A stretch of DNA of 64,000 nt from assembly GCA_030390025.1 (NCBI GenBank), contig CM059427.1, forward strand, positions 188,914,001 through 188,978,000, in the 5' to 3' direction. Position 1 is the first letter of the stretch, and every line of letters starts with the position of its first letter. The DNA is from Squalus acanthias. Its lineage: Eukaryota. Shown here piece by piece: positions 1 to 64,000 of the stretch. Both the position numbers and the translations under genes were made by a program. The notes under the pieces were generated by a model. That model saw only the letters and a list, made by a program, of their open reading frames with translations, was not told the DNA's origin and made no database searches.

Positions 1-1149
1 TCGTGTGTAACCAATTTGATTGAATTTATCAAGGGGGTGACTAGGTGTGTGGATGAGCGTAGTGCAGTTGATGTAGTCTACATGGAGTTCACCAAGGCAT
101 TTGACAAAGTCCCACATGGGAGACTGGTCAAGAAGGTAAGAGCCCATGGGATCCAGGGCAATTTGCCACATTGGATCCAAAATTGGCTTAGTGGCAGGAG
201 GCAGAGGGTAATGGTCGAAGGTTGTTTTTGTGACTGGAAGCCTGTGTCCAGTGGTGTACCGCAGGCTTCAGTGCTGGGTCCTTTGCTGTTTGTAGTGTAC
301 ATTAATGATTTGGATATGAATGTAGGAGGTATGATCAGTAAGTTCGCAGATGACATGAAAATTAGTGGAGTGGTAAATAGCGAGGAGGGAAGCCTCAGGC
401 TACAGGACGATACAGACGGGTTGGTTGGATGGGCAGAACAGTGGCAAATGGAATTTAACCCTGAAAAGTTTGAGTTGATGCATTTTGGGAGCACTAACAA
501 GGCAAGGAATACACAATGAATGGTAGGACCTGAGGAAGGACAGAGGATCAGAGGGACCTTGGTGTGCATATACATAGATCCCTGAAGGCAGCAGGACAGG
601 TAAATAAGGTGGTTAAAAAGGCATATGGGATACTTGCCTTCATTAGCCTAGGCATAGAATATAAGAGCAGGGAGGTTACGATGGAGCTGCACAAAACGCT
701 AGTTAGGCCACAGCTGAAATACTGTGTGCAGTTCTGGTTGCCACACTATAGGAAGGATGTGATTGCATTGGAGAGGGTGCAGAGGAGATTCACCAGGATG
801 TTAGCTGGGATGGAGCGCTTCAGCTATGAAGAGAGACTGGACAGGCTGGAGTTAATTTCCTTAGAGCTGAGAAGGCTAAGGGGGGTCCTGATTGAGGTGT
901 ACAAAATTATGAGGGGCATAGAATGTTAGATAGAAAGGAACTTTTCCCCTTATTAGAGGGGTCAATAACCAGGGGGCATAGTTTGAAGGTAAGGGGCAGG
1001 AGGTTTAGAGGGGATTTGAGGAAAACCTTTTTCACCCAGAGGGTTGTTGGAATCTAGAACTCACTGCCTGAAAGGGTGGTAGAGGCAGGAACCCTCACAA
1101 CATTCAAGAAGCATTTCGATGAGCACTTGAATCGCCATAGCATACAAGG

Positions 1150-2792
1150 TGTAGAATTCGCAATTATCGCGATTTCATTTTAATAAGGAGAAAACACAAG
1201 TTTCGTTCAAAACAGCTTTTATTTCAGCGGAATGCTGTCAGGTTTAAATTGGACACAAGCAGCCTGTAAAATGGCCGCCGCACCGCGTGACAGAACATTC
1301 GAGACTTTTCGGCAGGCAGACAAGATGGCGTTCCAATAAACATTTTTGCAGGATCGATAACGATTCAGCACAGTGAAGACAATACACAGGACATTATGGG
1401 TTTACAGTATAAACATCGATACTGGAATCGGTCTCCCAGGTACAAAGGAAAGCCATCAAGGGCCCATCCAAAGGACATTAATATGTAAACTCCCAACGGC
1501 TCTACGATGAGAGAGCCGTTAGCAGGTAGTTATACAGGACACTTGGAAGCCCCAAACCCCTCCAGGGGGAACACCGACCGATTTGACAATGGGAGAAATA
1601 TTAACAGGTACTCAAACATTTAGGAGTAGCCCCGAAACCCATTAAGGACAGAGATCACCCATACAGGACATTTTTGGGCGCCAAACCTTAAACAAAAGAA
1701 TGGACATTGTAGTTGGGCGGGAAACGGAAGAACTGTGCACTATAATTGCAGGCCCAAACCGTCCATTCGCTCTCTTGCCTCGTGTTCGTGACTCTTGCTC
1801 TTTTGCTCTTGACTCTTGCCGCTTGCTGCTGTTATCATCGTGGCTGCTCCTGTGTTTTATCCGGTCGATTCGTAACCTCGTGGCTGCTCCTGGGTAAAAG
1901 ACTGTTGCAAAGACCTATGTTGGTAGCTGGCAGCGGAACCGAAGGCCCGGGATGAGATGAGATGAGATGAGATGAGATGAGAGGAGAAGAGAAGAAGACC
2001 TTATCCATCGCCACGGTCAGTAAATCCCGACCGCGCCTGTAGGTCGATCAGCCAAGTCTTCTCGACAGGAAGTTTTCTTCTTTAACAAGACATATTGCAT
2101 CGATGATAACTGGACTGTGCAAACACATCGTATCAGTGATATTGACAACGGTGCTCCACCATACCCTGTATCCAACCAACAGAGGTCTTCACTACAGCGG
2201 ACGGTCCAGCCGACTGACCGAGCAGCAGAAGCAGTAAACAAGTGGGACCAGGAGATCTCCTGACCAACACGTGGGTGCTGCGGTGAAAAACATCCGATCA
2301 GCTATTCGGGATTTCTCCGAGTTATTACGAGTGGTGAGCATGAGTCTCGGGATCCTACGAAGCCAGTTTTAGGATAGTTATTGATAGGGGAGGGTTTAAA
2401 GATTAAGGATATTTGTAATGTGTGCCCTATTTACGTTGTGCTGGTCGTTCCTCGTTTCCCTAAGAGTGATTATAACTGTTTGTAAGATTGTACTGTCATT
2501 AATCTGTGCATATGACATGTATTTCATAATTTTAAGTATCATGCAATAAAGATTTTCCATTTCGTACCGTTCAAACCAAGTCTACATGAGTTTTATCTCC
2601 ATTACTGCTCTCGCATCTAAGTCCAGTGTCTAGAACCGTAAGGGAGAGTGATTCGAACCACTCACAGGGGTGTCTAGTGTTCCCAGACTGGCTGGAGACC
2701 AGGCCTAGACCCGCACTGACATACAGGCTGCACAGAGCCGCGTGAACCTCACAGGTTACGAGACACGCAGGGTCAGGAGAGTATCCCTTACA
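1150..2792 (+). mobile_element. Solo LTR, 1643 bp (ERV1- or Gypsy-like)
   Basis: TGTA...TACA ends; 4-bp TSD AAGG (1146-1149 / 2793-2796); AATAAA at 2545; the empty site is visible at 63671-63685. Confidence 0.88.
1950..1998 (+). repeat. (GAGAT)n / GA-rich microsatellite inside the LTR
   Basis: Direct reading of the sequence. Confidence 0.9.
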
Positions 2793-2905
2793 AAGGCTAC
2801 GGACCAAGTGCTGGAGAATGGGTTAGAATAGACAGGGCTTGATGACCGGCGTGGACACGATGGGCCGAAGGTCCTCTTTCTGTGCTGGAGAACTCTATGA
2901 CTCTA

Positions 2906-3672
2906 TGACTAAGTGTGAGATAATGCATTTGGGGAGGGCTAACAAGGCAGGACACTGAGAAGTGCAAAGGGACAAAGGAACCTTGGAGTAACTGTCCACA
3001 GTTCCCTGAATGTAGCAGGCCAAGTAGATAAGGTGGTTAAGAAGGCATTCAGAATACTTGTCTTTATTAGCCGATGCATAGAAAACAAGAGCAGGGAGGT
3101 ATGCTTGAACTGTATAAAACACTAGTTAGGCCACAGCTAGAGTTCTGCTAGAATACTGCGTGCAGTTCTGCTCACCACATTACAGGAAAGATGTGATTGC
3201 ACTAGAGAGGGTACGGAGGAGATTTGCGAGGATGTTGCCTGGACTGGAGAATTTTAGCTATGAGGAAAGATTGGAACAGAGGAGGCTGAGGGGAAACCTT
3301 ATTGAGGTGTATAAAATTATGAGGGGCCTAGACAGAGTGGATAGGAAGGACCAATTTCCCTTAGCAGAGGGGTCAACAACCAGGGGGCATAGATTTAAAT
3401 TAATTGTTCAGAGGTTTAGAGGGGATTTGAGGGGAAATTTCTTCACCCAGAGGCTGGTGGGGGTCTGAAAATCACTGCCTGAAAGGGTGGTAGATGCAGA
3501 GGCTCACCACATTTAAAAGATGCTTGGATGTGCACTTGAAGTGCTGTAACCTACAGGGCTACAGACCAAGAGCTGGACAGTGGGATTAGGGTGGATAGCT
3601 CTTTTTTGGCCGGCGTGGACACAATGGGCTGAAATGGCCTCCTTCCGTGCTGTGAATTTCTATGATTCTATG
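2906..3672 (+). mobile_element. CR1 LINE 3' fragment
   Basis: QFCSPHYRKD...FFTQR and a (ttctatga) tail. Confidence 0.9.
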
Positions 3673-3679
3673 GTTACCT

Positions 3680-4155
3680 CGGCGGGTCCGAGGTGAGTGC
3701 TGTCGGTGGTGGGTCGCGGCCCTGCTGCTGGCTCCATCCTGTTCCATAAACGGAACTTACTTTGATAGGGCTTGTTAAGCCTGCCCAGCGCGTTCCCCAG
3801 CCCAATTAGAGGAAGCGGGTCCGCTGATGTCATTCATGACACGCCATCAGCCGGTTTCCTTAAAGGGACCATGGCCAACTTTGTTTTGACATTGGTGGTG
3901 TCAGTGTTCCACAGTCTCGAAGTGCTGCAAACACTGACAATCACTGCAAAGAGGTGCAGGGCTGCACACAGGTTCTCCCATGACTAGCTCCATATAAACA
4001 CACAGGGAGGTCCTCTTTCCTTCCCGTAAGCGGAAGAGACCTCCCCAGGAGACCAACACAGCCTGGTTGCACATTGCGGCGGAGGTTACAAGCAGGGATG
4101 TCGTCAGCAGGACCAGGGTGCAGTGGCGCAAACCTTTCAATGATCTCATTAGATC
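3680..4155 (+). mobile_element. PIF/Harbinger remnant with a Myb/SANT-like ORF fragment
   Basis: Frame-broken peptide AAHRFS..REVLFPSRKRKRPPQETNTAWLHIAAEVTS..SRTRVQWRKPFNDL matches the trihelix Myb/SANT pattern of the Harbinger DNA-binding protein. Confidence 0.6.
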
Positions 4156-4179
4156 ACAAAACATTCGGTCAAAGCCACA

Positions 4180-5100
4180 CTCACTTTGCACAAAAGAAGA
4201 TGCTTGTGGTGGTTGGAGGTCAATCATCACAGCCCCAGGACATCGCTGCGGGAGTTCCTCAGGGCAGTATCCTAGGCCCAACCATCTTCAGCTGCTTCAT
4301 CAATGACCTTCCCTCCATCATAAGGTCAGAAGTGGGGATGTTCGCTGATGATTGCACAGTGTTCAGTTCCATATTTTGGACTCCACAGGAAGCATCTGGT
4401 TGAGTTTAACATTTGATGCATTTTTTAATGTTTAATGCCTTTGTTACTACAGGGTTATAGCCTATGAAACCCAGGCAGAGAGGACCTGCGTGAAGGAGGG
4501 AGGAGGACAGTAGGAGTATTTTTGTGTGTGTGTGTGCTAGGCCGATGTAGCAGAGCCTGGTCTCCAATCGTCTTGGATCCCCTTGCCATTGGACCAAGAC
4601 CTTGCTCTGTCAAGCCCGTGTGGTAGCTGGTGTGCAATGGCCACCCCACGTTAAAAGAATTCATGCACAGGCATCTTCCACCCTTTAAAATGAAGTTCGG
4701 GACCTGGAACGTCAGGACCCTCTTGGGCAACCCCAACAGCAACAGAGACTGTAGGTCCCGCATTGGACTCATCAGTCACCTGAGAACTCATTTTTAGTGT
4801 GGAACAAGTCATCCTCGGTTCCGAGGGACTGCCTAAGAGAAGAAGTCCAGTTCCATTCGCAACTCCTCAGATAATGAAGCATTCTGTGCCCACATGCAGC
4901 AAGACCTGGATGACATTCAGGCTTGGGCTGATAAGTGACAGGTTAACATTCACGCCACACAAGTACCAGGCAATGACTATCTCCAACAAGTAAGCGTCTA
5001 ACCACCACCCCTTGACATTCAATGGCACTACTATCGCCGATGGGCAATAAAATGCTTGTCTTGCCAGCGACGCCCAGATCCCATGAACAAATAAAAAAAA
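4180..5100 (+). mobile_element. Non-LTR retrotransposon fragments (Crack/L2-related RT)
   Basis: [27 protein letters not shown]. The 3' tail (gggcaataaaatgct..gccagcgacgcccagatcccat) is shared with 46820-46880. Confidence 0.7.
4520..4845 (+). mobile_element. Short bipartite RTE-derived element
   Basis: 5'UTR plus an MKFGTWNVRTL-like start joined directly to an RTE-type 3' end (CRSRIGLISHLRTH) and a gaagaag tail. Confidence 0.6.
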
Positions 5101-5163
5101 ATTACTCAAGTCACATTTAATCATTCTTTTAAAATCAAATATGATTGCAGTAAGATTGCCTAC

Positions 5164-5320
5164 CTTGTGGGAAGAGACTAGTGAAGAAGTCCAGAGACTG
5201 AGCAGCAAAGCTCCCAGCACAGCGACACACAACACACTGAGGTTCTCAGTCGTTGTTCCGCACAAAGTAATTGACGCTGTCTCTTGTGAAACCACAGGGC
5301 AGGCGAGCTTCCTCTTCCCC
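5164..5320 (-). promoter_or_regulatory. Candidate promoter and non-coding first exon of the next (leftward) receptor paralog
   Basis: Unique island with donor AAG|gtaggc at 5163, RUNX motif AACCACA (5290-5296) and ETS/PU.1 motif AAGAGGAAG (5308-5316); its position fits the duplication geometry. Confidence 0.35.
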
Positions 5321-5349
5321 TTCAGCTCAGGGTTCAGGCATCATTGTTT

Positions 5350-6210
5350 GAGCTGAGAAAGAAAATTGGCTCACAATCGGAAACAGAGGGTAGCTCAAAT
5401 GAGAACTTAACAAGCTCAAAAACATTTTGGGATGGGTAGCAAAGGGGTCAGTCCTGGGATCTGTTATTGTAAATGTTACTGGAAGAATTCAAATGGCAGA
5501 GCTCATGATAAATCAGAGAATCTGCTGTTTTATAATGATTGGAGTGTTATAACATGAAGTGCCTAGGGTCGAAATTCTGGGGTTCCAGCTCCGCTACAGA
5601 ATACGGACAGACTTGGACTCCCTGCCACCTCCAGCATAAACCTTGACCCCGCCCCAATTCCCTGGGATGGGTTCATTAGCACGTTTGGGCGATTGCATCA
5701 CACCTGTAAAGTTAATCTGTGATTCCCACTCGATCCACTCCACGAGGTAAGGATCGGGAGACGACTGCTCCAGGTAGCAGAAGATGAGAGAGCGCAAATC
5801 AGGAACAATATAACCCAATTCAGAAGGACTTAAATCTTATAGGCACAAATCTATAAGACACTGGATCGAACCTACACAGCTTTGGTCACCCAATTACAGG
5901 AAATATATTATTGCCTTTGGAAGATTGCTGAGATGTGCAAGAATGATAATTTATCAAGAAAGATTAAGGAATTCACACTTTGAGGAAGTCCACTGGAAAT
6001 TTTCAAGATTCTTAGAGAGCAAACACAATTGATCAATACATGTTGCTCCATATGATGAGGGGCGCACATACCAGGTGGCACAAATTAAGTATTAGTATAG
6101 GAAGGGAGGGCAGGGAGAAATTTTTCAATGTAGGGATATTAGTCAGGGAATAAGATACCAGGGAAGACCATTGAATCAGATGGTAGACATGGGTTACATA
6201 AAAACATAAG
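5350..6210 (+). mobile_element. Old, degraded CR1 fragment
   Basis: Recognisable NWLxxRKQRV and FWSPNYRK-like remnants. Confidence 0.5.
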
Positions 6211-12800: not shown

Positions 12801-12851
12801 AATTAGTTCCTGTCCCTGTGTTCCGATGTACCGCTCAGCCAAGGCTGTCAC
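9826..12851 (-). mobile_element. Young CR1 LINE; ORF2 (APE endonuclease + RT) with a single premature stop
   Basis: ORFs 11328-12851 (NARS, ITETW, YRPP, GDFN, SDH) and 9906-11306 (RT) are in the same frame, separated by TAG at 11328-11330. Confidence 0.95.
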
Positions 12852-14302: not shown

Positions 14303-14476
14303 ACAGATCCATTACCTTGGATGCATTCCCATAAATGGTTAAAAGAATGGAGTCAAAATGAAAGGAAATATACTCTCACTATTATTACAACATGGCTAAA
14401 GAGGATTAAAAACAGAAAATGGTGGAAAGCACTCAGCAGGACAGGCAGCATGTCTGGAGAGAGAAAGAGAGTTAAT

Positions 14477-24037: not shown

Positions 24038-24302
24038 CTGATGGAAAGTGGGAGCAGGGAAGTTATTGCAGTTTGAATCAGGAAAAATATTCAAAGCTAT
24101 CAGAATTCACCAAATTTGGAACAATTGCTTCCTTTAACTGATGATTCCTTTAAATTCAGTACAATGTACAATATTTAAATGAAATTTCAAAATATAGTTT
24201 GTGACCACATAATATCTGTTCAACGAACATCAGTTTTCTCAGTGTCAAGTGACAGCTCGGCACTAATTCCTGATTTACTGGAAAGCTTAAAGAAATTCTT
24301 AC

Positions 24303-24406
24303 TCTGGTCATCCTCTTCAAGCAGCAAATTAGTCCAACAGCAACGCCCAGTTTAACCAACAAGTAGCCCGAAACTGTGAAGATCCAAATCTCCGGAAGTG
24401 GTCTCA
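24303..24406 (-). CDS. Receptor transmembrane exon (VRPLPEIWIFTVSGYLLVKLGVAVGLICCLKRMTR)
   Basis: Acceptor ttgtccttcacag|, phase 1 in and phase 0 out (AGA|gtaaga). Hydrophobic span with a central K, then CC and a basic stop-transfer KR. Confidence 0.82.
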
Positions 24407-24976
24407 CTGTGAAGGACAAAGTTGAGATTTTAGTTTCACTCTCCATCTCGTTTAATATTTAAATACTCCTGCCAGTCAATCTATAAAATATGTGGAAAGT
24501 GAAAACATTCTGCTTTAAACACTGGGAGCCAGAGAACCAAATATTTGTGTCAAGACCGAGTCCACGTTGTGTTCTTTTTGTCACATTTTATGTGTCTGGA
24601 TTTGACTATTTTCATCAGATTCTTGTGGGTGCAATAGTTTTGAATTAAAGTGAGCAGCTCTGAGTGAATGAAAAGGGATTGAATAAACTCAAAATTGGGT
24701 CATTCATTGTCTAAACTGTCAAACTGGATGTGAAAGTGTTGTCCTGACCAGAGTGGCAGAATACAGATTCACACCTGAGATTCCCCAGGTGGCGAGTTCC
24801 CAATCTCGGCTGTGCTATCTGGGGAGACATTAACCATCAAGGTGTGAGACAGCCACAGATCTGTAACTGGTATGTAGTAAAAAAAAAACTATTTTGACAA
24901 GGTGCAATTTTGTTGAAACTATTAAAGTTTAACAGTGTTACCATGCATGTTTTTGAAAGTTTTGTGTGTTGTTGTA

Positions 24977-29399: not shown

Positions 29400-29827
29400 C
29401 TGAGACAGGAAGAGAAGAAGAGTTTCTCTGAGCCTGAATAGTGGAGACTTTCAACTGCAATTTTTGCAGCTGGGCATTACTTTTTGCTGAGATTTATTTG
29501 GGCATTCTGCAGCCGCATTCTGATTGATACTGGGTCAGAAAACCAATGGAAACTGCTTGTGTACCATTTTACTATCAAATATAAATGCTTGCCGTGTCTC
29601 AGTGAGTTTACCAAGAGCATAGTTGAGACATACAGAGCAGGAAAGTTCCAAGCTCGATCCCAGGCTGTGCTGAGTTATCTCAGGGTAGATTTTCTGAGGC
29701 TCTGCCCCACTGTAGAGCCTCACACACAGGATATAAAGGAGGGGCTACTTCTGGCAACAAGAACAATAAGTGACCAGAATTTTCTATCCAGATTATAAAT
29801 ATAAAGAGCAAACCCTGAGTCACTTAC

Positions 29828-30097
29828 CACTGGGCTCCAGATAGTACGGGACTAAAACCCGGGGCCTGTTTTGATAAAACAAAGCACATATCCAGTTCCC
29901 TCTGCCTCTGTCAGCTTTCTGAATAATCAGTCTCAATGATTTCTCTTCCCCATTCTGTCCATTCCATGTGTTTTCTTCAACAGTTTTGCCATCACTATTG
30001 ATCCAAACAAGTCTCATTGATTCAGTGACATCAGAGACAGAGCAGGTCAGGGTAACGGTGTCTCCCTCAGTCACTGCATCAGATGGTTCAGCTGTGA
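29828..30097 (-). CDS. Receptor D4 exon: C2-type Ig domain with WxC
   Basis: 78-nt intron from D3; acceptor cttgtttacacag|, donor AGTG|gtaagtg, 270 nt. Sequence EGDTVTLTC..LVW..GNWIC. Confidence 0.9.
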
Positions 30098-30175
30098 CTG
30101 TGTAAACAAGAAAATCATTTAGATTTCAAACAATAACTTGATCATCGGAAAGAATGACAACATTCTGTCTCCTAC

Positions 30176-30529
30176 CTTTAACTGTGATTAGTTTAATGGT
30201 CACCATGTTATATGATCCCAGAGAACATGTGTAATCTCCGGCATCTTCAAACAGTACAGGGACAATCCTCACACTGAAGTTCTTGCCATTAAACTTTGTC
30301 TCTGTGGGCACCAGTCGACTCCCAAAGTAGGTCCTGTTTACATTGATGAGCTGAGATATCGAAGCAGATGCTATTGATTTCTCCTGATTTTGAAGATGAT
30401 GTGACCTCCAGGTCCATGCAGTAGTGTTGTAAGAGTGAACATAATTCTTATAATAACCATAGCAAATCAGGTCGAGTTCACTGTGATCTGTGCCTGATCG
30501 ATAAAGTGTGTAACTCTTCCCATATAAAT
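30176..30529 (-). CDS. Receptor D3 exon: V-type Ig domain
   Basis: Acceptor tctctctattacag|, donor AAAG|gtagg, 354 nt, phase 1-1. Sequence LDLIC..AWTW..FGSRL..FSVRIVPVLFEDAGDYTC; the 5' part was translated by hand beyond the ORF track. Confidence 0.9.
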
Positions 30530-30923
30530 CTGTAATAGAGAGACAGAGAACAACGTGTTAGATTTTTACGGTTGTTGAGTTACAGAGAAAATAGAGAATA
30601 ATTATTGGCCACAATCATATAAACCTATTTTGCATTTTGATTATCATAATTTTATTTGATCAAGTTTTTGTCAAAGTTATAAACTGTTTAAAAAATGTAC
30701 AACTTGGGTTAATTTGATATTCATAAGGAAACAGAATTTTTTAAATGAAACATTTTTGATTTTTAGTATGATGAGATTTTTGTGCCCTGGGCGACACCAT
30801 GACATCACAGGCCCAATAGTCTGAGGCTGGGCCAGTAACCTGAAGTCCTGCTGGTGGCGGCTGCAGGCTACATAGAACTACATTTTGCACAGAGCAATTT
30901 TGCAATGTTTTAAATATGCCCAT

Positions 30924-44749: not shown

Positions 44750-45461
44750 TTGTTAAAAGAAGGCCTTGCGCCTCCTTTTTCAAAGTGTAACTTCTCCGTG
44801 CTTACCCTCATGGAGGAACCTGTAAAAAAACCCGAAGTGCGAGGCGAACGCGCTGGCCCTCCGGCGTGCGTGTTCGACCTCTGAACCCCTTCCTTCAGGG
44901 GAACGGAAGTGCCGGTTCCTCGCGCATGCGCAGCACATGCAAGAAACCGGCAGTTTTGTTCTGTCCACGGGAGAGTACACAGCGCGTACTCACCCGTGGC
45001 GAGCCTAATTTCTGCCCCATGGTTGTCCCGGATCACAGTGCTCTCCACATGCTGCAGTTGCGGAACACCGTCTGCACTGCCATGCCTATATGACCTTGAT
45101 TTATTTAATTACATTTTTTTAAATTTGTAATTAGATAACTTAGTTTACAGTGTAGTTTCCTGACTACTTACTTGATCTAGATTAAGTTAAGAGAACTGAA
45201 ATTAAATATCTACCTGCAACAAAAAGCATCTAAGTAGTGTAGTAAAAAGCATAAACTCCTTCCCTCCCTTCTCCGAATTCCCACTCTTTCCAAATTTCCA
45301 ACCAAAGCATTCTGTTCAAGTCCACTCTATTTAATCCCGCTCTGTGCAGACCGCATGACTCTAAGCATGACGTGCGGATGGTTGACATGTATGACCACTT
45401 TATATGTAGCAGTTTTATATTAATAACTCTTTAATATCTACTGTGAGGTAACTGCACTTAC

Positions 45462-45731
45462 ATTGGTCCACAGAAAAATCTGCTTTTCCTGTGAGAATAA
45501 TGGATCCAGCTTCCTGCACTTCACACGCGTACAACTCCTTATCCTCTACTGCAGCATGTTTGACTATCAGATAGACTGTGTTATTTAGTCGGATCTGATC
45601 AGTGTTGCTCCTGTTCTGCTGAGATGAGTCTCTCTGTTTCCATTGAAGACTGACTGTATCTGAGAGTTTGGAGATGGTACAGCTGAGTGTAACGTCACTG
45701 CCCACCACAGCACTCTGTGGACTTGACTCAA
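45462..45731 (-). CDS. Receptor D2 exon: C2-type Ig domain
   Basis: Acceptor tgtttttcacag|, donor CAAT|gtaagt, 270 nt, phase 1-1. Sequence GSDVTLSC..LQW..EDKELYAC. Confidence 0.9.
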
Positions 45732-46814
45732 CTGTGAAAAACAGATCAATAAGATTTAGTGTAAGTAGTGACATGTACAATCCAACAATTAGGTTCTAAC
45801 TGACCATAGGATGTGCCCATCATCAGCACTTGTATCTTGCTGTATTAAAGAGTCAGGCCAGATTACACACAAGTGCATTTTATCAGTAGAATAACACAGT
45901 GGGCCTGAAAATTCTAAGTCCTGCTCTGCCAGCGTAATTGAGGCAGAGCAGCACTGGTGACCTTTACCCCTGACCCTGCTGGAGTATCCGGGGTCAGGTT
46001 AAGGTTACATGGTTTGGATGACATTTGGGGAAGCCGACACCACAATGGACAGGTGATGGAATCTCACCAGAGGAGGGTGTGATGGAAATGTAGCGCCCAT
46101 ATTATCAGACATGGAGAAGGCTCCAGTCCCACTCTGTTCTCAATGTGCCTCGCACACTTCAGTAAGACCACCCAACACACGCACTGGGAGCCTGTGCACA
46201 AAATCCACGTCAAAGTCATTACGTTATTTAAATGAGTGGGCTCCCAAAATGCTCCTGAGCAGGGCTCCAATCATTGAGCGTCCATGAGGAACGGCACTTC
46301 AGGAGAGGCTTGTTCTAAAAATGCCCACCCTGACTTTCAGTCCCACCTACAACATGACAAGTAAGAATCAAATCTTCAACAGGGACTTTAATTCCAATAT
46401 CAGGCCAAAAAAATGGTGCCATCCATTAGCTGCTGGCGCCCAACACTCTTGTGCCCGACCCGTGTGACATTCCCCGTGTACCACGCACTATGTACCATGA
46501 GTACCACTAACAAATGTAAATGAGTTGACTTTCTATTATGGTCATCTCATTCTGGTGCAGTTTGGGCCAACACCTCAGGAGCAATGGTCCAGGCCCAGAT
46601 CATATTTTGTCCACTACGACATTTCAGGATTGGATTATAATTTGTATCAAGTACATTTGACAGTAACCTCAGCCTCATTTAGATATTACACACATCAACC
46701 AACCAGAAAGTGCAGCTGTTGAGCAGCATCCTTAGTTGGCAGAAACTAAAGATTTTGATTTATTTATACTAAAGTTTTTTAAATGTTTTTGAGTAGATGC
46801 AATGACCGGAATCT

Positions 46815-48144: not shown

Positions 48145-48676
48145 AGTGTATCTCTTTTCTCTGCCACGTTCTTCTTGCTTTCCTGAAGGTGTTAACTCCT
48201 TATCATAGTCCGAGTTCCAGGGACACTTGACATCCTCTGGGACTTCAACCAAGTGACACATCTAACAGGTTCACTGGACAGCAAACAGGAGCAGTGTTTC
48301 TGGCCAATCTTATTCCTGTCCCATCTTATTCCTGTCCCATCGCGCTGAGGCCCATTACTACAAGGGATCTATTGGTTTGGTAACAGAATTCAGTACATCT
48401 GACAGAGAATGTGCCACTGTACAGATCATAATACTCTCTGTGGGGTAGATTCCTCGGTATGATATTTCTGGTGAAATTGTCGAAAAGTTTTTACTCATGT
48501 TGACCATTTCTGGAGAAACAATGAACAAAATCTTTCACCTGGTTGTTTTAATGAGAGATGCTCTCTGCACTGGGTGATATAAATCTCACATGATCCTGGC
48601 AATCTCTCATCATTACACATGAAATTATTTACGGAGAATCATTTTATTTTTCCTTTCTAGACTTTATCCCACTCAC

Positions 48677-49018
48677 CTTTGATCCCAAATATTTCATATC
48701 GTTTCAGGATTTTATTACTCGGCTGTGTTTGAGTCAAGATGAACAATCCCGCAAGTTTAAATGTGGGTTTTCCAATTCTCAGATTAATGGTACCACGATT
48801 CCATTTTATCTTCTCGGACAAGTCGCTATTTGTAAAGTCATTGTTCCATTGTGCACCCCAACGATTCAAACTCCTTTTGTGAAAAGTAACCAGCCGCTGG
48901 ATTTCTTGCCCTGAGTGTGGTTTCCATTCCCAGACAACAGGGCCATTCCCAGGATTGTCCGGTCCGTTTAATGGAATGTCATCTCCCTCATCCAAAAAAT
49001 AAATATGATTTGGGTTTC
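48677..49018 (-). CDS. Receptor D1 exon: V-like Ig domain without cysteines
   Basis: Acceptor ttcctcgttctaacag|, donor AAAG|gtgagt, 342 nt, phase 1-1. Sequence EGDDIPLNG..VVWEW..NLRIGKPTFKLAGLFIL keeps V-set spacing with both Cys replaced. Confidence 0.8.
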
Positions 49019-51142
49019 CTGTTAGAACGAGGAACAATGTAAGTATTTAAATATTTAAATTGCAACTCCTTAATCCCATAATTGTAATGATTAATATCGG
49101 AGTTCATCTATTTACTATCTATGGGAACCTGAGCATACATTCAGAAGAGAGAGAAGCAAAGCTGGAAACCGAAGGCAGAAAATTACTAAGCGAGTTTGGA
49201 AGGCAGTGGAAACAAAGGCTAGGAAAAAAGCAACAAAGGTTTTGGCAGTGCTTGCTGGTAAATCCTTCAATGCAAGGAGTCCAGTGAATAAGGCAGATGA
49301 GCTGAGGCCACAGGTAGACATAGATATCATAGATATTACTGAAACATGGCTTAAAGAAGGGCAGGAATGGTAACTCAACATTCTTGGTTATACAGTTTTC
49401 AGACAAATATTAACTGGGATAGAGTCAGTGTAAAAGGTATAGAGGGTGCAGAATTTTTAAAATGCATTCAGAAGATCTTTTTTAGCCAGCACGTCGCTAG
49501 CCCAACAAGAGAGTTCTGGACTAAGTTTTAGGGAATGAAGCTGGGCAGGTGGAAGGGGATCAGTGGGGGAGAATTTTGTTGGTAGTGATCATAATTCAGT
49601 TAGATTTAACGTAGTTATGAAAAGGGACAAAGATAGACCAGGAGTAAAACTTCTCAATTGGAGAAAGGCCAATTTACTAAGCTGAGATGTGATTTAGCAA
49701 AAATGGAAACAGCTACTTGAAGGTAAATCAGTGTCAGAGCAGCGGGATGCATTCAAAGAGGAGATAGTCAGGATTCAGTGCAAATATGTTCCCACAAAGA
49801 AAAAGGGCGGGACTCCCAAATCTAAAGCTCCCTGGATGTCAAGGAGCATACAAGGTAGGATAAGGAAAAAAAGGAAGCTTATGTCAGATACCAAGAGCTC
49901 AATACTGCAGAAAGCCCAGAGGAGTATAGAAAGTTCAGGGGTGAAATTAAAAAATAAATTAGGAAAGCAAAGAGAGGGCATGAAAAAGTATTGGCAAGTA
50001 AAATCAAGGAAAAACCCAAAGATGTTTTAGAGTAAGAGAATAACTAAGGAAAGAGTAGGGCCTAATAGAGACTAAAAATGGTAACCTATGTGTGGTGACG
50101 GAAGATGTGGGTATGGTTCTTAATAAACTTTGTGTCTGTCTTCACAAAAGGGAGGGACGATGCAGACATTGTAGTTAAGGAGGAGGAGTGTGAAATGTTA
50201 GATGGGATAAAATAGTGAGAGAGGAAATATTAAGGGGCTTAGCATCTTTGAAAATAGATAAATCGCCACGCCCGGATGAAATGTATTCCAGGCTGTTAAG
50301 AGAAGAATGGGAGGAAATAGCGGAAGTTCTGACCATCATTTCCCAAACCTCTCTGGCTACAGTCATGGTGCTGGAGGACTGCTAACATTGTACCATTGTT
50401 TAAAAAGGGAGACAGGGATAGTCTGAGCAATTACAGACCAATCAGCCTAACCTCGGTGGGGGGAAATTATTAGAAAAAATTTATTTAGAAAGGCACAGAT
50501 TAATCAAGGAGAGTCAGTGTCGATTTGTTGAGGGAAGGTCCTATCTGACTAATTTGATTAAATGTTTTGAGGAGGTAACAAGGCGGATCAATGAGGGTAG
50601 CGTGTCTGATGTAGTCTACATGGATTTAGCAAGACTTTTACAAGGTCGCACATGGCAGACTGGTCAGAAAAGTAAAATCCCATGGGATCCAAGGGAAAGT
50701 GGCAAGTTGGATCCAAATATGGCTCAGTGGCAGGAAACAAAGGGGAATGGGCGACAGTTGTTTTTCTGACTGGAAGGCTGTTTCCAGTGGGGTTCCACAG
50801 GGCTCAGTACCAGGTTTCTTGCTTTTTTGTGGTACATGTCAATATTTTGGACATCAGTGTAGGGGTCATGATTAAGAAATTTGCAGGTGATAAAAAATTG
50901 GCCGTGTAGTTGATAGTGAGGAAGAAAGCTGTAGACTGCAGGAAGATATCAATGGACTGGACAGATGGGCAAAAAAGTGGCAAACGGAATTAAAACCGGA
51001 GAAGTGTGAGGTAATGCATTTGGGGAGGGCTAACAAGGCATGGGAATACACAATAAATGGTAGGACACTGAGAAGTGTAAAGGGACAGAGGGACCTTGGA
51101 GTGCATGTCTACAGATCCCTAAAGGTACCAGGACTGGTAGAT

Positions 51143-54222: not shown

Positions 54223-54754
54223 TTAGATAAGGTGGTTAAGAAGGCATACGGGTTACTTTACTTTATTAGCCAAGGCATAGAATATAAGAGCAGGGAGGTT
54301 ATGCTAGAACTGTATAAAACACTCGTTAGACCACAGCTAGAATACTGCATACATTTCTAGTCACCACTTTACAGGAAAGATGTGATTGCACTACAGAGGG
54401 TACAGAGGTGATTTATGAGGATGTTGCCAGAACTGGAGAATTTTAGCTATGAGGAAAGATTGGATAGGCTGGGGTTATTTTCTTTGGAACAGAGAAGGCT
54501 GAGGGGAGATTTTATTAATGTGTATCAAATTATGAGCAACTTAGATAGAATGGATAGGAAGGACCTATTTCCCTTAGAAGAAAGGTCAATAACCAGGGGA
54601 CAAAGATTTAAAGTAATTGGTAGAAGGATTAGAGGGGAGTTGAGGAGAACTCTTTTCACCCAGAGGGTGGTGGGGGTCTGGAACTCACTGCCTGAAAGTA
54701 TGGTAGATGCAGAAACCCTCATCGCATTAAAAAATACTTGGATATGCACTTTAA

Positions 54755-57104: not shown

Positions 57105-57192
57105 TTTGTGTGAAAACAGACGGAAGTAGAAACACAAAGAAACTGATCATCAAACCAGCTGGCATTTTGCTGCAGAAAAATCGTAGCTTCAT
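57105..57192 (-). CDS. Receptor leader exon (MKLRFFCSKMPAGLMISFFVFLLPSVFTQ)
   Basis: Hydrophobic signal-like peptide; phase-1 donor CAAA|gtaagtg at 57104. An upstream acceptor (tttcttacag|, exon starts 57214) implies a non-coding first exon. A second in-frame ATG lies at 57165. Confidence 0.75.
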
Positions 57193-57999: not shown

Positions 58000-58542
58000 A
58001 TAGATACAGATATATATATAGCACCAGAAAACCACCAGAAGTAAAACTGAGGCACATTTCTTGAATATGTTTAACACTTCAGACTGTGAAGAAAAGAAAT
58101 GAGGTAAAACAGCTTTCCAAATTATTTCCCCATTCTAACTTGGAATTGGAAAATGAACAATAAACATCTTCAGTAAAATTCTCCACCACCTGCTGTGCTA
58201 ATTGTAATAAAAGTTATTTTATAATATTTAAAAATTTGCAATTATTCTATTCAAAATAATCTATGATGGATCATGTATGATCTACCTCTCATCCACAATC
58301 CACAGAAAATTTCCAACTGAAAATCATAGCTGGGATTTTCCTCACCAGAAGAGAGAGAAGCAAAACTGAAATTAGAAAGCAGAAAAGTAGAAAGTGAATT
58401 TGGAAGACAGAGGAAGCAAGGGCTAGAAAATAGACAACAAGGGAGTTTGGCAATACTAAATCGTATACATTTCCACGCAAGGAGTATAGGGAATAAGGCA
58501 GATGAGCTGAGAGCACAGATAGACACTTGGGAGTATGATATT

Positions 58543-59306
58543 GGGCCAAAAATTCGGCCCTTCCCGGGTGAGTACACAGTGCGTACTCACCCGTAAGGCG
58601 TCCCGAAGTGCCGGTTTCCTGCATGCACTGCGCATGTGCGGGAAACCGGAACTTCCGGTCTGGTGAAGGGGGCGGTTCGTAGGTGAACTGCGTGCGCGGT
58701 AGAGGCTGCGCGCACGCAGCAAACTTAGGTTTTTTTTCAGTTTTCTCCGGGAGGGTAAGTAGTGAAGAACCTGCACATTTAAAAAGGAGGCGCAGGAGCC
58801 GTTTTCAACAAGGTAAGTGGTTAATTAAGCATAATTTTTAAAAAATGTCAACAGGTTTATCTTTTTTAGATACTTTAAAGAAAGGTAAGTTTATTTTTCG
58901 CACTGTTAAAAAGTATTTTAATTTTTTCAAAAATTTAAATTTTTGTTTAAAGTGGTTAATTTATTTAACTATAGTTATTTTATAAATGTGATGGTTTTTT
59001 AAAAATTTATTTTAAGTTTAGCTGTTCTTTTGGGGCCGATTTCAATTCATACATTTGACAGGTATTCCTGTCAAATCTATGAATGAAAGATGGTCTGCTG
59101 CCATTGGCTCTCCATGGCCCACGTGATCCCAGGGGACGCATCACACTGACTGCGCCCCTGGGACACGCAAACACTGCGCGCTGGCACTTGGAGCAGGCCC
59201 AGGAGCTGAATTTCCCGTGGGCCCAAAACACAACGGCAGGCGCGGTAGGTAAGTGCGCGCGCGATCCTTACCCCCGCGGCAAGCCGGAGAGGCGAATTTC
59301 AGGGCC
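58543..59306 (+). mobile_element. MITE family A, copy 6 (inside a CR1 EN remnant at about 58345-59720)
   Basis: TIR gggccaaaaattcggc; the host YDI|IAIT motif is split by the insertion. Confidence 0.85.
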
Positions 59307-59719
59307 AACATAGCTATTACTTAGAAATGGCTGAAAGAAGGGTAGGTATGGCAGCTCAACATTCCTGCTTACAGGGTTTTCAGATGGGATAGAGATGGGG
59401 TTAAAAAGGAGGATGGGTTGCAGTATTGATTAAATAAACAATTACAGCTGTGAGGAGGGATGATATGTTAGAAGGATCATCAAATGAGGCCATATAGGTT
59501 GAATTGAAGAACAAAAAAGGGGCGATCACACTGTTGGAAGTGTACTGTAGATCCCCAAACAGTCAGAGGGAGATAGAAGAGCAAATATGTAGGCAAATTT
59601 CTGAGAAGTGCAAAAACTATAGGGCAGTAATAGTCGGGGATTTCAACTACCCTAATATAAACTGGGATAAAATTAGTGTGGAAGGGAAAGAGGGAGTGGA
59701 ATTCATAAAATGCATTCAG

Positions 59720-59975
59720 GAGTAAACTAGGCCTGTATACTCTTGAATTCAGAAGAATGAGAGGGGATCTCATTGAAGCATACAAAATTATTACAGGGCT
59801 TGATAGGATGGATACTGGGAGAATGTTTCCCTTGGCTGTGGAGTCTAGAACCAGGGGCCACAGCCTCAAGATAAAGGGTAGGCCATTCAGGACTGAGATG
59901 AGAAGAACTTTCTTCACACAGAGGGTGGTGAATCTTTGGAATTCTCTACCCCAGAGGGCTGTGGAGGCTCAGTCA
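59720..59975 (+). mobile_element. CR1 RT 3' fragment
   Basis: RGDLIEAYKI..FFTQRVVNLWNSLP. Confidence 0.85.
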
Positions 59976-62900
59976 TCTGCGAAACTGAGATCTTCGTGGA
60001 TAGCACGTTTAACGAGGTGGTCACACCGCAGGGAAAGAGTGCACAGGCAGACAGGAAATGGGTGACCGCCAGAGAGAGTAAAAGAACTAGGAAGGTAATG
60101 CAGGAGTTCCCTGGGTCCATCACCCTCTCCAACAGATATTCTGTTTTGGATACTGCTGGAGGAGATGGTTTCTCAGGGGAATGCAGCAAGAACCAAGTCC
60201 ATGGCACTACGAGTGGCTCAGCTGCACAGGAGGGGAGGAAAAAGTGTGGGGGAGCAATAGTGACAGGGGATTCTATGGAAAGGGGAACAGATAGACATTT
60301 CTGTGGCCACAGACGTGACTCCAGGATAGTATGTTGCCTCCCTGGTGCCAGGAGCAAGGATGTCACTGAACGGCTGCAGGACATTCTGAAGGGGGAGGCC
60401 GAACAGTCAGAGGTCGTGGTTCACATTGGTACCAACGACATGGGAAGAAAGAGGAATGAGGTCCTGCAACAAGAATTTAGGGAGCTAGGAAGCAGATTAA
60501 AAAGCAGGACCTCAAAGGTTGTAATCTCTGGATTACTCCCGGTGCCACGTGTTAGTGAGTGTAGGAATAGGAGGATAGAGCAGATGAATGCGTGGCTAAA
60601 GAGTTGGTGCAGGAGGGAGGGCTTTAGTTTCCTGTATCACTGGGTCTGCTTCTGGGGAAGGTGGGACCTGTACATGTCAGACGGGTTGCACCTGAACCGG
60701 AACGGGACCAACATCCTTGCGGGGAGCTTTGTTCGTACTGTTGGGGGGGCGGGTGGTGGGGGGGGGAGTTTAAAATAACTTGGCAGGGGAATGGGATACA
60801 AAGTGGAGCTATAGTAGGGGGTGATGCACAGCCAAATATAGAGGAAAAAACAAGTCAGCCTGGAAGGCAGAGCAAATATGTAATGGCACAAGGGAGTATG
60901 GCAAGGCTGGATGGCATTTATTTTAATGTAAGGAGTCTTGCGAGTAAGGCAGATGAATTGAAGGTGTTGATGAACACATGAGAGTATGATATTGTTGCTA
61001 TCACAGAGACATGGTTGAGGGAGGGGCAGGACTGGCAGCTCAATATTCCGGGGTATAGAATCTTCAGGCGAGACAGAGGGGGGGGTGTAAAAGGGCAGGG
61101 GGTGTCGCAATATTAATCAAGGAGTCAATTACTGCTGTAAGGAGGGATGATATCTTAGCAGGTTCCTCTAATGAGGCCATATGGGTAGAACTTAAAAACA
61201 AAAAGGGGGCAAGCACTTTGCTGGAGTGTACTATAGGCCCCCAAACAGTCAGGGGGAGATATAGGAACAGAAATGTAGGCAAATCTCAGAGAAGTGTAGA
61301 AATAATAGGGTAATAATAGTAGGGGATTTCAACTTCCCCAATAATAACTGGGATAGTCAGAGTGTGAAAGGCTTAGAGGGTGCGGAATTCTCAAAGTGCA
61401 CCCAGGAGAGCTTTTTGAGCCAGCATGTAGAAAGTCCTACAAGAGAGGGGGTGGTACTGGACCTCATTCTAGGGATTATAACCGGGCAAGTGGTAGAAGT
61501 GTATGTAGGAGAGCATTTTGGTGACATTAACCATAATTAGGTAAAATTTAAGGTAGTCATGGAAAAGGACAAAGATGGACCGGAAATAAAGGTTCTAAAT
61601 TGGGGGAAGGCCGATTTTAATATGATAAGGCAGGATCTGGCCAAAGTGGACTGGGATCAGCTACTTGTAGGAAAATCCGCATCAGAGCAGTGGGAGTCTT
61701 TCAGAAAGGAAATGAGAGAGTACAATGCCAACATGTTCCCGTAAAGGTCAAGGGTAGGACCAACAAGCCCAGGGAACCCTGGATGTCAAGGGATATACAA
61801 GAATGGATTAGGAAAAAAAGGGAGGCTTTTGGCAGATACAAAGGACTAAAAACAGTGGAAGCCCTAGAGGAGTATAGAAAGTGCAGGGGGTTACTTAAAA
61901 AAGAAATTAGAAGAGCGAAGAGGGGGCATGAAAAAACACTGGTGGGCAAAATAAAGGAAAATCCCAAGGTGTTTTATAAGTATATTAAGGGTAAAAGGAT
62001 AACCAGGGAAAGATTAGCACCCATTAGGAACCAAAGTGGCAATCTGTGTGTAGAGCAGGAAGATTTGGGTGAGGATTTAAATGAGTATTTTGCATCTGTG
62101 TTCACTATGGAGAATGACGATGTCGGCATAGAAATCAGGCAGGGGGATTGTGATATACTTGAACAAATTAGTATTGAGAGGGAGGAGGTACTCGCGGTTT
62201 TAGCGTGCTTAAAAGTGGATAAACCCCCAGGCCCAGATGAGATGTATCCAAGGCTGCTGTGTGAGGCAAGGGAGGAGATTGCAGGGGCTCTGACATAAAT
62301 TTTCAGAACCTCTCTGGCCACAGGGGAGGTGCCAGAGGACTGAAGAACAGCTAACGTATTACTATTATTCAAGAAGGTTAGTAGGGATAAACCAGGGAAT
62401 TACAGGCCAGTGAGCCTAGCATCAGTGGTAGGGAAATTATTGGATAAAATTCTGAGGGACAGAATTAGTCTCCACTTTGAGAGGCAAGGATTAATCAAGG
62501 ATAGTCAGCATGGTTTTGTCAGGGGGAGATCGTGTGTAACCAATTTGATTCAATTTTTCAAGGGGGTGACTAGGTGTGTGGATGAGGGTAGTGCAGTTGA
62601 TGTAGTCTACATGGAGTTCACCAAGGCTTTTGACAAAGTCCCACATGGGAGACTGGTCAAGAAGGTAAGAGCCCATGGGACCAAGGGCAATTTGCCACAT
62701 TGGATACAAAATTGGCTTAGTGGCAGGAGGCAGAGGGTGATGGTCGAAGGTTGTTTTTGTGACTGGAAGCCTGTGTCCAGTGGTGTACCGCAGGGTTCAG
62801 TGCTGGGTCCTTTGCTGTTTGTAGTGTACATTAATGATTTGGATATGAATGTAGGAAGTATGATCAGTAAGTTCGCAGATGACATGAAAATTGGTGGAGT

Positions 62901-63790
62901 GGTAAATAGTGAGGAGGGAAGCCTCAGGCTACAGGACGATACAGACGGGTTGGTTGGATGGGCAGAACAGTGGCAAATGGAATTTAACCCTGAAAAGTTT
63001 GAGTTGATGCATTTTGGGAGCACTAACAAGGCAAGGAATACACAATGAATGGTAGGACCCTAGGAAGGACAGAGGATCAGAGGGACCTTGGTGTGCATGT
63101 ACATAGATCCCTGAAGGCAGCAGGACAGGTAAATAAGGTGGTTAAAAAGGCATATGGGATACTTGCATTCATTAGCCTAGGCATAGAATATAAGAGCAGG
63201 GAGTTTATGATGGAGCTGTACAAAACGCTAGTTAGGCCACAGCTGAAATACTGTGTGCAGTTCTGGTCGCCACACTATTTGAAGGATGTGATTGCATTGG
63301 AGAGGGTGCAGAGGAGATTCACCAGGATGTTAGCTGGGATGGAGTGCTTCAGCTATGAAGAGAGACTGGACAGGCTGGAGTTAATTTCCTTAGAGCTGAG
63401 AAGGCTAAGGGGGGTCCTGATTGAGGTGTACAAAATTATGAGGGGCATAGATAGGGTAGATAGAAAGGAACTTTTCCCCTTATTAGAGGGGTCAATAACC
63501 AGGGGGCATAGTTTCAAGGTAAGGGGCAGGAGGTTTAGAGGGGATTTGAAGAAAAACTTTTTCACCCAGAGGGTTGTTGGAATCTAGAACTCACTGCCTG
63601 AAAGGGTGGTAGAGGCAGGAACCCTCACAACATTCAAGAAGCATTTCGATGAGCACTTGAAATGCCATAGCATACAAGGCTACGGACCAAGTGCTGGAAA
63701 ATGGGATTAGAATAGACAGGGCTTGATGGCCGGCGCAGACACGATGGGCTGAAGGCCCTCTTTCTGTGCTGTATAACTCTATGACTCTAT
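59976..63790 (+). mobile_element. Near full-length CR1 (ORF1 SGNH-esterase-like; frameshifted ORF2)
   Basis: GDSM..CCLPGA..HIGTND..DGLHLN at 59936-60778; EN/RT pieces 60900-63587. Confidence 0.93.
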
Positions 63791-64000
63791 GATTAAGTGT
63801 GAGATAATGCATTTGGGGAGGGCTAACAAGGCAAGGGAATACACATTAAATGGTAGGACACTGAGAAGTGCAAAGGGACAAAGGGACCTTGGAATAACTG
63901 TCCACAGTTCCCTGAATGTAGCAGGCCAAGTAGATAAGGTGGTTAAGAAGGCATTCAGAATACTTGTCTTTATTAGCCGATGCATAGAAAACAAGAGCAG
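62530..64000 (+). repeat. Segmental duplicate of window positions 1-3094 (without the LTR)
   Basis: Same frameshift, same rare substitutions and same CR1-CR1 junction. Confidence 0.92.

What the first reader, a model, noticed from the sequence alone, without database searches (positions are those of the whole stretch)
1..64000. Window is one ~62.5 kb unit of a recent tandem segmental duplication
Seen: position 1 aligns to 62530 and 3094 to 64000. The copies share private lesions (the RNTQ* frameshift, MEFTKAF, FELMHFGST) and the junction of one CR1 tail to a second CR1 fragment, which independent insertions would not share. Inference: the receptor gene is tandemly arrayed, as in KIR-, LILR- or NITR-like clusters, with CR1 copies available for unequal crossing-over.
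Basis: partly seen in the sequence, partly recalled or inferred. Interest (0 to 1): 0.8.

Follow-up and report, generated by a model that had tools for sequence, protein, structure and literature searches.

The report
Duplicated repeat pair flanking receptor gene
The two ends of this cartilaginous-fish DNA window are copies of one stretch of jumping-gene debris, which shows a local duplication around an immune-receptor gene but does not prove that the whole 62.5 kb is repeated in tandem.

Summary
The match is real. Positions 1-1149 equal 62530-63679 at 97.3%, and 2789-3094 equal 63673-64000. All visible matching DNA is transposable element: a CR1-like LINE 3' half whose tail abuts a 5'-truncated second CR1.

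Contigs from public runs show both elements are very high-copy, with many copies 95-99% alike, so 97% identity alone is ordinary.

Common descent still holds:
- The exact tail-to-fragment junction occurs only in these two copies in the window.
- The right copy shares the left copy's minority letter at 10 of 17 sites where the left copy departs from the family majority.
- After duplication the left copy gained a 1643-bp solo-LTR-like insert with a 4-bp target duplication, and lost 22 bp.

Not shown: that the whole 62.5 kb is the repeated unit. The flanks are out of reach, and the one reads test past the CR1 pair was inconclusive. Only one CD4/LAG-3-like receptor gene lies in the window. Earlier scan notes, unverified, place related genes on both sides at roughly 60-80 kb spacing. 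The scan also noted similar 'tandem unit' readings on other pieces of this genome.

My odds: tandem unit about 0.4, shorter local duplication about 0.4.

The parts
1..1149 (+). Left copy: 3' half of a CR1-like LINE reverse-transcriptase region, cut by the window start
   Evidence: 97.3% to 62530-63679; Pfam RVT_1 E 1e-17 on 1-516
1150..2792 (+). Solo-LTR-like insert (1643 bp) present only in the left copy. It starts TG and ends CA, has AATAAA near 2545, and is flanked by the 4-bp target duplication AAGG (1146-1149 and 2793-2796)
   Evidence: Sequence read; absent from the right copy; contigs joining 1145 to 2793 with 4 ambiguous letters (table 5); high-copy depth (table 2)
2793..2908 (+). Left copy: CR1 3' untranslated end and its 8-nt repeat tail (CTCTATGA x2 at 2893-2908)
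2909..3673 (+). Left copy: second, 5'-truncated CR1 fragment starting directly after the first tail. It has a 22-bp deletion relative to the right copy at 2948/2949 and its own tail at about 3657-3673
59498..63792 (+). Right copy: near full-length but frame-broken CR1-like LINE (esterase-type ORF1 at 59897-60775, then endonuclease and RT pieces). The part matching the left copy is 62530-63792
   Evidence: ORF map; Pfam Lipase_GDSL_2 E 2.5e-13 on 59897-60775 and RVT_1 E 1.2e-31 on 62344-63045
63793..64000 (+). Right copy: start of the same second CR1 fragment, cut by the window end
24159..24458 (-). ORF holding the transmembrane exon of the receptor gene (GYLLVKLGVAVGLICC, lysine inside the helix)
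   Evidence: Translation; no Pfam hit
29823..30125 (-). ORF holding Ig exon D4 (C2-like, WxC motif NWICA)
   Evidence: Pfam ig E 1.5e-7; weak whole-domain match to LAG-3 D2, 7tzg_C, E 0.0027
30129..30557 (-). ORF holding Ig exon D3 (V-like)
   Evidence: Pfam V-set E 6.1e-5, below the curated cut-off
45418..45795 (-). ORF holding Ig exon D2 (C2-like, YAC where CD4/LAG-3 have WxC)
   Evidence: Pfam Ig_2/Ig_3 E about 6e-8; 61-68% identical fragments in cartilaginous fish
48660..49046 (-). ORF holding exon D1 (V-like, no cysteine at all)
   Evidence: no Pfam or PDB match; atlas neighbours are V-set clusters at 0.95, a lead only
57106..57192 (-). Candidate leader (signal-peptide-like MKLRFFCSKMPAGLMISFFVFLLPSVFTQ); not tested
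   Evidence: Translation; inference from the sequence only

Best explanation
The two window ends descend from one genomic segment that was copied as DNA, in direct orientation, about 61-62.5 kb apart, inside a cluster of CD4/LAG-3-like Ig receptor genes of a cartilaginous fish. Inferred order of events: (1) a CR1-like LINE came to lie with its tail directly against a 5'-truncated CR1 and picked up some private substitutions; (2) a block containing this pair was duplicated; (3) the copies diverged by about 2.6-3.6%, and the left one received an LTR retroelement that collapsed to a 1643-bp solo LTR with a 4-bp target duplication, and lost 22 bp. The size of the duplicated block is not visible, because both copies run off the window. 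Almost as likely (about 0.4) is a shorter block, listed as the first rival. Shown: the match, the shared junction, the shared minority letters and the LTR anatomy. Inferred: the order of events, the DNA-level mechanism and the block size. The confidence given is for DNA-level duplication by descent, not for the 62.5-kb unit.
For: Alignment. Identical junction with the same number of tail repeats, 2 of 2 copies and nowhere else in the window, 0 expected. The two other CR1 tails have unrelated downstream DNA. At 10 of 17 sites where the left copy departs from the family majority, the right copy shares the minority letter; this is 8 of 14 under the strict over-90% criterion. Two random family members would be expected to share almost none. 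The LTR insert has TG..CA ends, AAGG/AAGG flanks, and a 4-letter ambiguity at the contig joint 1145->2793. For the tandem version only: same orientation; both copies cut by the window ends, which favours a long block; low-depth contigs 4-7% different from the window just past the second CR1 tail, at 3656-3792 (table 8); unverified scan notes of CD4/LAG-3-like genes on both flanks. In passages of PMC12642534, nearby duplications are commoner and larger than distant ones.
Against: All visible homology is high-copy transposable element. 49,634 to 82,525 contigs per organism-A run were laid on 1-6000 at 93% or better, mostly 95-99% alike, so identity alone proves nothing. The shared minority letters could mark a rare CR1 subfamily rather than one ancestral insertion. 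Against the tandem version: at 5818-6000 the only contig shown is a 270-nt one with 0 differences (X2 and X3, one sample), no variant rows are listed there, and summed depth is close to that contig's; the tool warns that contigs show presence, not absence. The noted downstream gene starts about 37.9 kb past the window end, which gives an offset of about 78 kb rather than 61-62.5 kb unless large insertions intervene. The upstream note describes duplicated V domains rather than this gene's features. Most vertebrate segmental duplications are about 1 kb (PMC12642534, passage).
Confidence: 0.8

Rival explanations
1. Short local duplication. Only a block of a few kb (the CR1 pair plus some flank) was copied and now sits as two direct low-copy repeats about 62.5 kb apart around a single receptor gene. 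The gene is not duplicated at this period. The repeats would instead be substrates for later deletion or duplication of the gene.
For: Only 1.5-3.1 kb of homology is visible, all of it transposable element. There is one gene copy in the window. 5818-6000 looks single-copy in contigs. Most segmental duplications are about 1 kb (PMC12642534, passage). The spacing of noted neighbouring genes does not fit 62.5 kb exactly.
Against: Both copies are cut by the window ends, which is much more likely for a long block than for a block of a few kb at just this spacing (inference). Divergent low-copy contigs at 3656-3792 suggest the paralogue runs at least past the CR1 pair.
Confidence: 0.38
2. Composite retrocopy. 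A read-through transcript from the first CR1 into the adjoining CR1 fragment, which has its own 3' tail, was reverse-transcribed as one unit, giving several copies with the same junction without any DNA-level duplication.
For: The second fragment ends in its own CR1-type tail at 3657-3673, a plausible 3' end for such a transcript. Both families are very abundant and young.
Against: The shared letters are held by about 1% or less of family depth, so such a lineage would be small. Two members then landing 62.5 kb apart in the same orientation, with a window starting in one and ending in the other, is very unlikely (inference). The element is frame-broken. Divergent low-copy contigs cover the flank just past the tail, though none bridges it by 31 letters.
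Confidence: 0.07
3. Assembly artefact: two haplotypes or collapsed repeat copies of one locus were placed one after the other.
For: The region is 43% LINE-protein-like ORFs and lies in a multigene cluster, both hard to assemble. The contigs could not confirm either copy specifically.
Against: There is no N run in the window. The copies differ by 30 substitutions in 1150 bp, a 1643-bp LTR with its own target duplication and a 22-bp indel. That is far more than expected between alleles (inference; no heterozygosity figure from a call).
Confidence: 0.06

Closest known systems
   Same: Direct-orientation copies tens of kb apart in a repeat-rich region that holds Ig-superfamily receptor genes. This gene has an intramembrane lysine and a short tail, as activating members of those families do.
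   Different: Only transposable-element DNA is seen duplicated here. No second gene copy is visible. The receptor is V-C2-V-C2 (CD4/LAG-3-like), not KIR/LILR or NITR in layout. The period and the role of CR1 in the exchange are untested.
CD4/LAG-3 family (PMC10768021, passages seen)
   Same: Four Ig exons in V-C2-V-C2 order and WxC in D4 (NWICA). D4 aligns over its whole length, weakly, to LAG-3 D2.
   Different: D2 has YAC instead of WxC. D1 has no cysteine and matches no Pfam or PDB entry. The transmembrane helix has a lysine, and no CD4- or LAG-3-type tail motif was examined. According to unverified scan notes the gene sits in a large multigene cluster rather than the LAG-3/CD4 pair. The passages I saw mention no such expansion; the paper's supplements were not seen.
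LINE 3' transduction / read-through retrocopies (general knowledge)
   Same: A LINE followed directly by downstream sequence that ends in a usable 3' tail.
   Different: Rarity of the shared letters, co-location of the copies and hints of shared flank argue for DNA-level copying.

Membership tests
Segmental duplication (operational: at least 1 kb, at least 90% identity, not explained by high-copy repeats) | Length at least 1 kb and identity at least 90% | tested here: met
   1150 columns at 97.3%, plus 305 aligned letters at 96.4%
Segmental duplication (operational: at least 1 kb, at least 90% identity, not explained by high-copy repeats) | Homology includes DNA that is not a high-copy repeat | tested here: not met
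   All of 1-3094 is CR1, LTR and CR1 again, at 10^5-10^6 summed contig depth, against tens in 5801-6000. After repeat masking nothing visible would remain.
Segmental duplication (operational: at least 1 kb, at least 90% identity, not explained by high-copy repeats) | Copies identical by descent at the DNA level (shared junctions, shared private changes) | tested here: met
   Junction in 2 of 2 copies and 0 elsewhere in the window; 10 of 17 minority letters shared. Caveat: a read-through retrocopy is not fully excluded.
Tandem duplication unit of about 62.5 kb | Same orientation of the copies | tested here: met
   Plus/plus alignment
Tandem duplication unit of about 62.5 kb | Homology continuous over the whole unit, head to tail | tested here: inconclusive
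   Flanks not available. Contigs on 3095-6000 give divergent low-copy contigs at 3656-3792 (for) and a single-copy look at 5818-6000.
Tandem duplication unit of about 62.5 kb | A second receptor gene copy one period away | not testable with these tools
   Only unverified notes: genes noted 31 kb upstream and 37.9 kb downstream
KIR/LILR/NITR-like multigene receptor cluster | Many paralogous genes side by side, with activating and inhibitory forms | not tested
   One gene in the window, with a transmembrane lysine. Cluster and ITIM forms are known only from unverified notes. The D2 search found 3 relatives at 61-68% identity in cartilaginous fish within its length limits.
CD4/LAG-3 family | V-C2-V-C2 ectodomain | tested here: inconclusive
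   D2 and D4 pass Pfam Ig cut-offs. D3 V-set scores 23.6 bits, below the cut-off of 26. D1 has no Pfam hit, only atlas V-set neighbours.
CD4/LAG-3 family | WxC motif in strand F of both D2 and D4 (PMC10768021) | tested here: not met
   D4 has NWICA; D2 has LYACEV
CD4/LAG-3 family | Tail motif (LCK-binding CxC/CxH or LAG-3 ITIM-like) and synteny with LAG-3/CD4 | not tested
   Tail exons not modelled; flanks not available
CR1-like LINE | Endonuclease plus reverse transcriptase ORF2, ORF1, short repeat tail | tested here: met
   RVT_1 on both ends; esterase-type ORF1 in the right copy; 8-nt repeat tail. That such a tail and an esterase ORF1 mark the CR1 clade is recalled, not from a call. The endonuclease pieces of the right copy were not scanned.
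Solo LTR of an endogenous retroelement | TG..CA ends, short target-site duplication, polyadenylation signal, many genomic copies | tested here: met
   ends, AAGG/AAGG, AATAAA; high depth; joint with 4 ambiguous letters. No matching internal provirus was examined.

The most novel reading that the evidence does not exclude
The window is one unit of a still-diverging head-to-tail array in which a CD4/LAG-3-shaped, adaptor-coupled (transmembrane-lysine) receptor gene is amplified one gene per unit of about 60-80 kb. That would be a cartilaginous-fish counterpart of KIR/LILR/NITR clusters built on the CD4/LAG-3 scaffold. The CR1 pair and its later LTR insertion would serve as datable markers of the last duplication.
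Probability: 0.35. Interest if true: 0.6.

Novelty: new member of a known kind. Interest (0 to 1): 0.3.

Why it matters
If the unit is truly tandem, it gives a dated, recent birth event in a large receptor family of a cartilaginous fish. It also predicts a near-identical neighbouring gene whose differences would show what selection acts on. If only a short block is duplicated, the pair forms direct low-copy repeats around a single receptor gene, which predicts copy-number variation of that gene. Either way the case is a caution: in this genome two LINE copies at 97% are ordinary, and only junctions and minority letters separate a duplication from two insertions.

Tried and rejected
- **Flank look-ups:** The by-sequence look-up with D1 was blank.
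- **Copy number from contig depth:** rejected. The tool gives one figure per contig and says so. The depth carrying the window's letter at 'private' sites came out in the thousands, so it cannot count copies.
- **Reading the 3095-6000 test as decisive:** rejected. 1-5200 is high-copy repeat, 5200-5800 looks like a low-copy repeat with several copies, and 39 variant rows and most contig pieces are hidden.
- **PDB sequence searches of the four Ig exons:** only generic Ig matches. D4 gave a weak LAG-3 hit and D1 gave nothing. Atlas look-ups gave generic V-set and C2-set neighbours.
- **D2 homology search:** 3 hits among 12 candidates, at 61-68% identity. It cannot see full-length proteins or tell 97% paralogues from alleles. 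For the same reason I did not spend the other two protein searches, the representative search or the cluster listing.
- **dN/dS among copies:** impossible, because only one gene copy is visible.
- **Dating:** no substitution rate came from any call, so none was attempted.
- **Supplements:** the supplements of PMC10768021, which may list further shark CD4/LAG-3-like genes, were not seen.
Full report
**Observation.** The window has no N and 45% G+C. A self-comparison finds 1-1149 = 62530-63679 (1119/1150 identical, 97.3%) and 2789-3094 = 63673-64000. A global realignment gives 30 mismatches and 1 gap in the first part. The second part has 11 mismatches in 305 aligned letters, plus a 22-bp indel and two 1-bp gaps. 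Among the 34 internal repeat pairs of 500 bp or more, this pair is the most similar; the next is 93.2%. The change of offset (62,529, then 60,906) comes from a block present only in the left copy.

**What the matching DNA is.** Both ends carry reverse transcriptase (Pfam RVT_1, E 1e-17 and 1.2e-31). The right copy is the 3' part of a near full-length but frame-broken LINE at about 59.5-63.8 kb, with an esterase-type ORF1 (Lipase_GDSL_2, E 2.5e-13). The element ends in an 8-nt repeat tail (CTCTATGA twice). In both copies the tail is followed at once by a second, 5'-truncated CR1 that starts at the same nucleotide. In the left copy that second fragment ends with its own tail at about 3657-3673. 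Calling this clade 'CR1-like' rests partly on my recollection of CR1 tails and ORF1 types.

**Are the copies related by descent or just members of one family?** I searched public runs with window:1-6000. Twenty runs were listed, 5 of them holding half or more of the sampled words, and all are kept as contigs. I laid X1, X2 and X3 (organism A, two samples, two studies) and X6 (organism B) on 1-6000 at 93% likeness or better.
- **The repeats are very abundant.** 49,634, 64,360 and 82,525 contigs were laid for the organism-A runs. For X1 the likeness classes were 9534 / 22147 / 17953 (99+, 95-99, 90-95). Summed depth was 10^5-10^6 across 1-5200, against tens to hundreds in 5400-6000. So both CR1 elements and the inserted block are very high-copy and young, and 97% identity between two copies is ordinary in this genome.
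- **The named lesions are not private.** None of the 40 variant rows shown (39 more hidden) lies under MEFTKAF or FELMHFGST. The RNTQ* frameshift is a G-run one base shorter at 506-507. The intact form holds 91%, 43%, 39% and 44% of depth in X1, X2, X3 and X6, so the frameshifted form is common.
- **Other shared derived letters exist.** Table 3 lists 17 sites in 1-1149 where the left copy departs from most family contigs. The right copy shares the minority letter at 10 and has the majority letter at 7. Taking only the 14 sites where the other letter holds over 90% of depth in all three organism-A runs, 8 are shared. Two unrelated family members should share almost none.
- **The junction is exclusive to the pair in this window.** The 34-nt junction pattern has 2 matches and 0 expected. 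The two other tails in the window (33070-33093 +, 38519-38542 -) run into unrelated DNA.

I conclude that the two ends descend from one ancestral arrangement.

**Events after the duplication.** The left-only block is 1150-2792 (1643 bp). It begins TG, ends CA, has AATAAA near 2545, and is flanked by AAGG on both sides, where the right copy has a single AAGG. Contigs that join 1145 to 2793 have 4 ambiguous letters at the joint, which fits a 4-bp target duplication, and the block itself is high-copy. This is the anatomy of a solo LTR, so it inserted and collapsed after the duplication. The left copy also lacks 22 bp of the second CR1. The duplication is therefore not very recent in absolute terms. 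I have no substitution rate from any call, so I give no date.

**Does the homology go beyond the CR1 pair?** This is the crux, and I could not settle it. The flanks are not available to any tool here. In the test part of the laid stretch:
- **3095 to about 5200** is again high-copy repeat.
- **3656-3792**, just past the second tail, carries only low-depth contigs that differ from the window by 4 of 91, 8 of 122 and 8 of 136 letters (X1, X2, X3). No contig has the window's letters at 3744 or 3746. This is what a diverged low-copy paralogue of the flank would look like. However, none of these contigs bridges the tail by 31 letters, and the window's own version is missing.
- **5818-6000** shows a 270-nt contig with 0 differences (X2 and X3, same sample), no variant rows, and summed depth close to that contig's. 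This is what single-copy DNA looks like.

The tool warns that contigs show presence and not absence, so both are hints only.

**Context from earlier scan notes (AI notes, not checked by me).** My own stretch 23984-57214 was read as a CD4/LAG-3-like four-Ig activating-type receptor (s1-889014). A 'CD4/LAG-3-like Ig receptor with a transmembrane lysine' is noted 37,878 letters past the window end, spanning 23,104 letters (s1-888020). A retroelement gag/PBS is noted 25,960 past the end (s1-888121). Duplicated V domains are noted 31,223 before the start, spanning 19,919 letters (s1-888720). Further clusters are noted at about -122 kb, -187 kb, -0.72 Mb and -2.1 to -2.4 Mb, one of them with the same GYLLVKL..CC motif. 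These notes make an arrayed family plausible. The downstream gene would lie about 78 kb from mine, though, not 61-62.5 kb, unless large insertions intervene. How the upstream distance is measured is ambiguous. Similar 'tandem unit' readings were noted on other pieces of this genome.

**The gene between the copies.** On the minus strand I find ORFs holding:
- D1 (48660-49046), V-like with no cysteine;
- D2 (45418-45795);
- D3 (30129-30557);
- D4 (29823-30125), with NWICA;
- a transmembrane exon (24159-24458), GYLLVKLGVAVGLICC;
- a signal-peptide-like stretch at 57106-57192.

There is one copy of each. Pfam supports Ig domains for D2 and D4. D3 is below the V-set cut-off and D1 has no match. D4 aligns weakly over its whole length to LAG-3 D2 (7tzg_C, E 0.0027), and D1 has no PDB match. 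Passages of PMC10768021 give V-C2-V-C2 and WxC in both D2 and D4 as the CD4/LAG-3 signature. Here D4 has it and D2 has YAC instead, so I do not file the gene as a member. The D2 exon finds 3 proteins among 12 candidates: a fragment from an unnamed assembly (68% identity), a partial Chiloscyllium punctatum protein (61%), and a Leucoraja erinacea 'CD276 antigen homolog' (67% over 44% of the query). This supports a cartilaginous-fish origin. Exons were not joined.

**Weighing.**
- **DNA-level duplication by descent:** about 0.8.
- **Within that, whole-unit tandem duplication:** about 0.4. It is favoured because both copies are cut by the window ends, by the direct orientation, by the cluster context, and by the passage in PMC12642534 that nearby duplications are commoner and larger.
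- **Within that, a shorter block:** about 0.4. It is favoured because only transposable-element DNA is seen, by the single-copy look of 5818-6000, by the misfit of the noted gene spacing, and by the passage that most duplications are about 1 kb.
- **Read-through composite retrocopy:** about 0.07. The lineage carrying the shared letters is rare, so two such copies this close together are unlikely.
- **Misassembly:** about 0.06. There is no gap in the window, and the differences are far above allelic level.

The claim that CR1 copies drove unequal crossing-over is untested. LINE-protein-like ORFs cover 27,480 of 64,000 bases, so substrates abound, but no breakpoint is visible.

**Novelty.** A local duplication in a repeat-rich immune-receptor cluster is a known kind of event, and this instance is not described in anything I saw. 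Searches: (listings). Papers read: passages of PMC10768021 and PMC12642534. The interest lies mostly in the receptor family, which other findings of the scan cover.

Noticed in passing
window 13791-14303: Tandem array of a 42-bp unit, 12.2 copies, 94% matches. It gives long repetitive ORFs in several frames.
   Followed up: no
window 9909-12851 (-) and 51374-54235 (-): LINE copies with long open frames: 473 and 507 aa side by side, and a 954-aa ORF with endonuclease and RT domains (Pfam). These are possibly young insertions that would differ between duplicated units.
   Followed up: partly
window 27112-27515 and 29313-29729: Direct repeat at 83.8% identity on either side of a LINE fragment (about 27.7-29.06 kb), just downstream of exon D4 on the gene strand. 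This overlaps the scan note on a duplicated stop-containing exon (s1-889099).
   Followed up: no
window 44133-44372: ORFs on the two strands (44133-44369 - and 44136-44372 +) translate to nearly the same 79-aa sequence. So this stretch of about 240 bp is a near-perfect palindrome.
   Followed up: no
window 14483-15249, 20155-20918, 30923-31689, 43197-43716, 58538-59307: Five copies, in both orientations, of a repeat of about 770 bp at 84-93% identity, with no LINE-protein similarity; element type unknown.
   Followed up: no
window 4363-4856: Many contigs in all four runs skip about 484-489 bp here. So the window carries an insert of about 486 bp inside another high-copy repeat relative to most genomic copies (table 5).
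   Followed up: no
window 47115-47789 (-): 225-aa proline/serine-rich low-complexity ORF in the D1-D2 intron. My first script wrongly took it as a LINE reference because of its length; I corrected this.
   Followed up: partly
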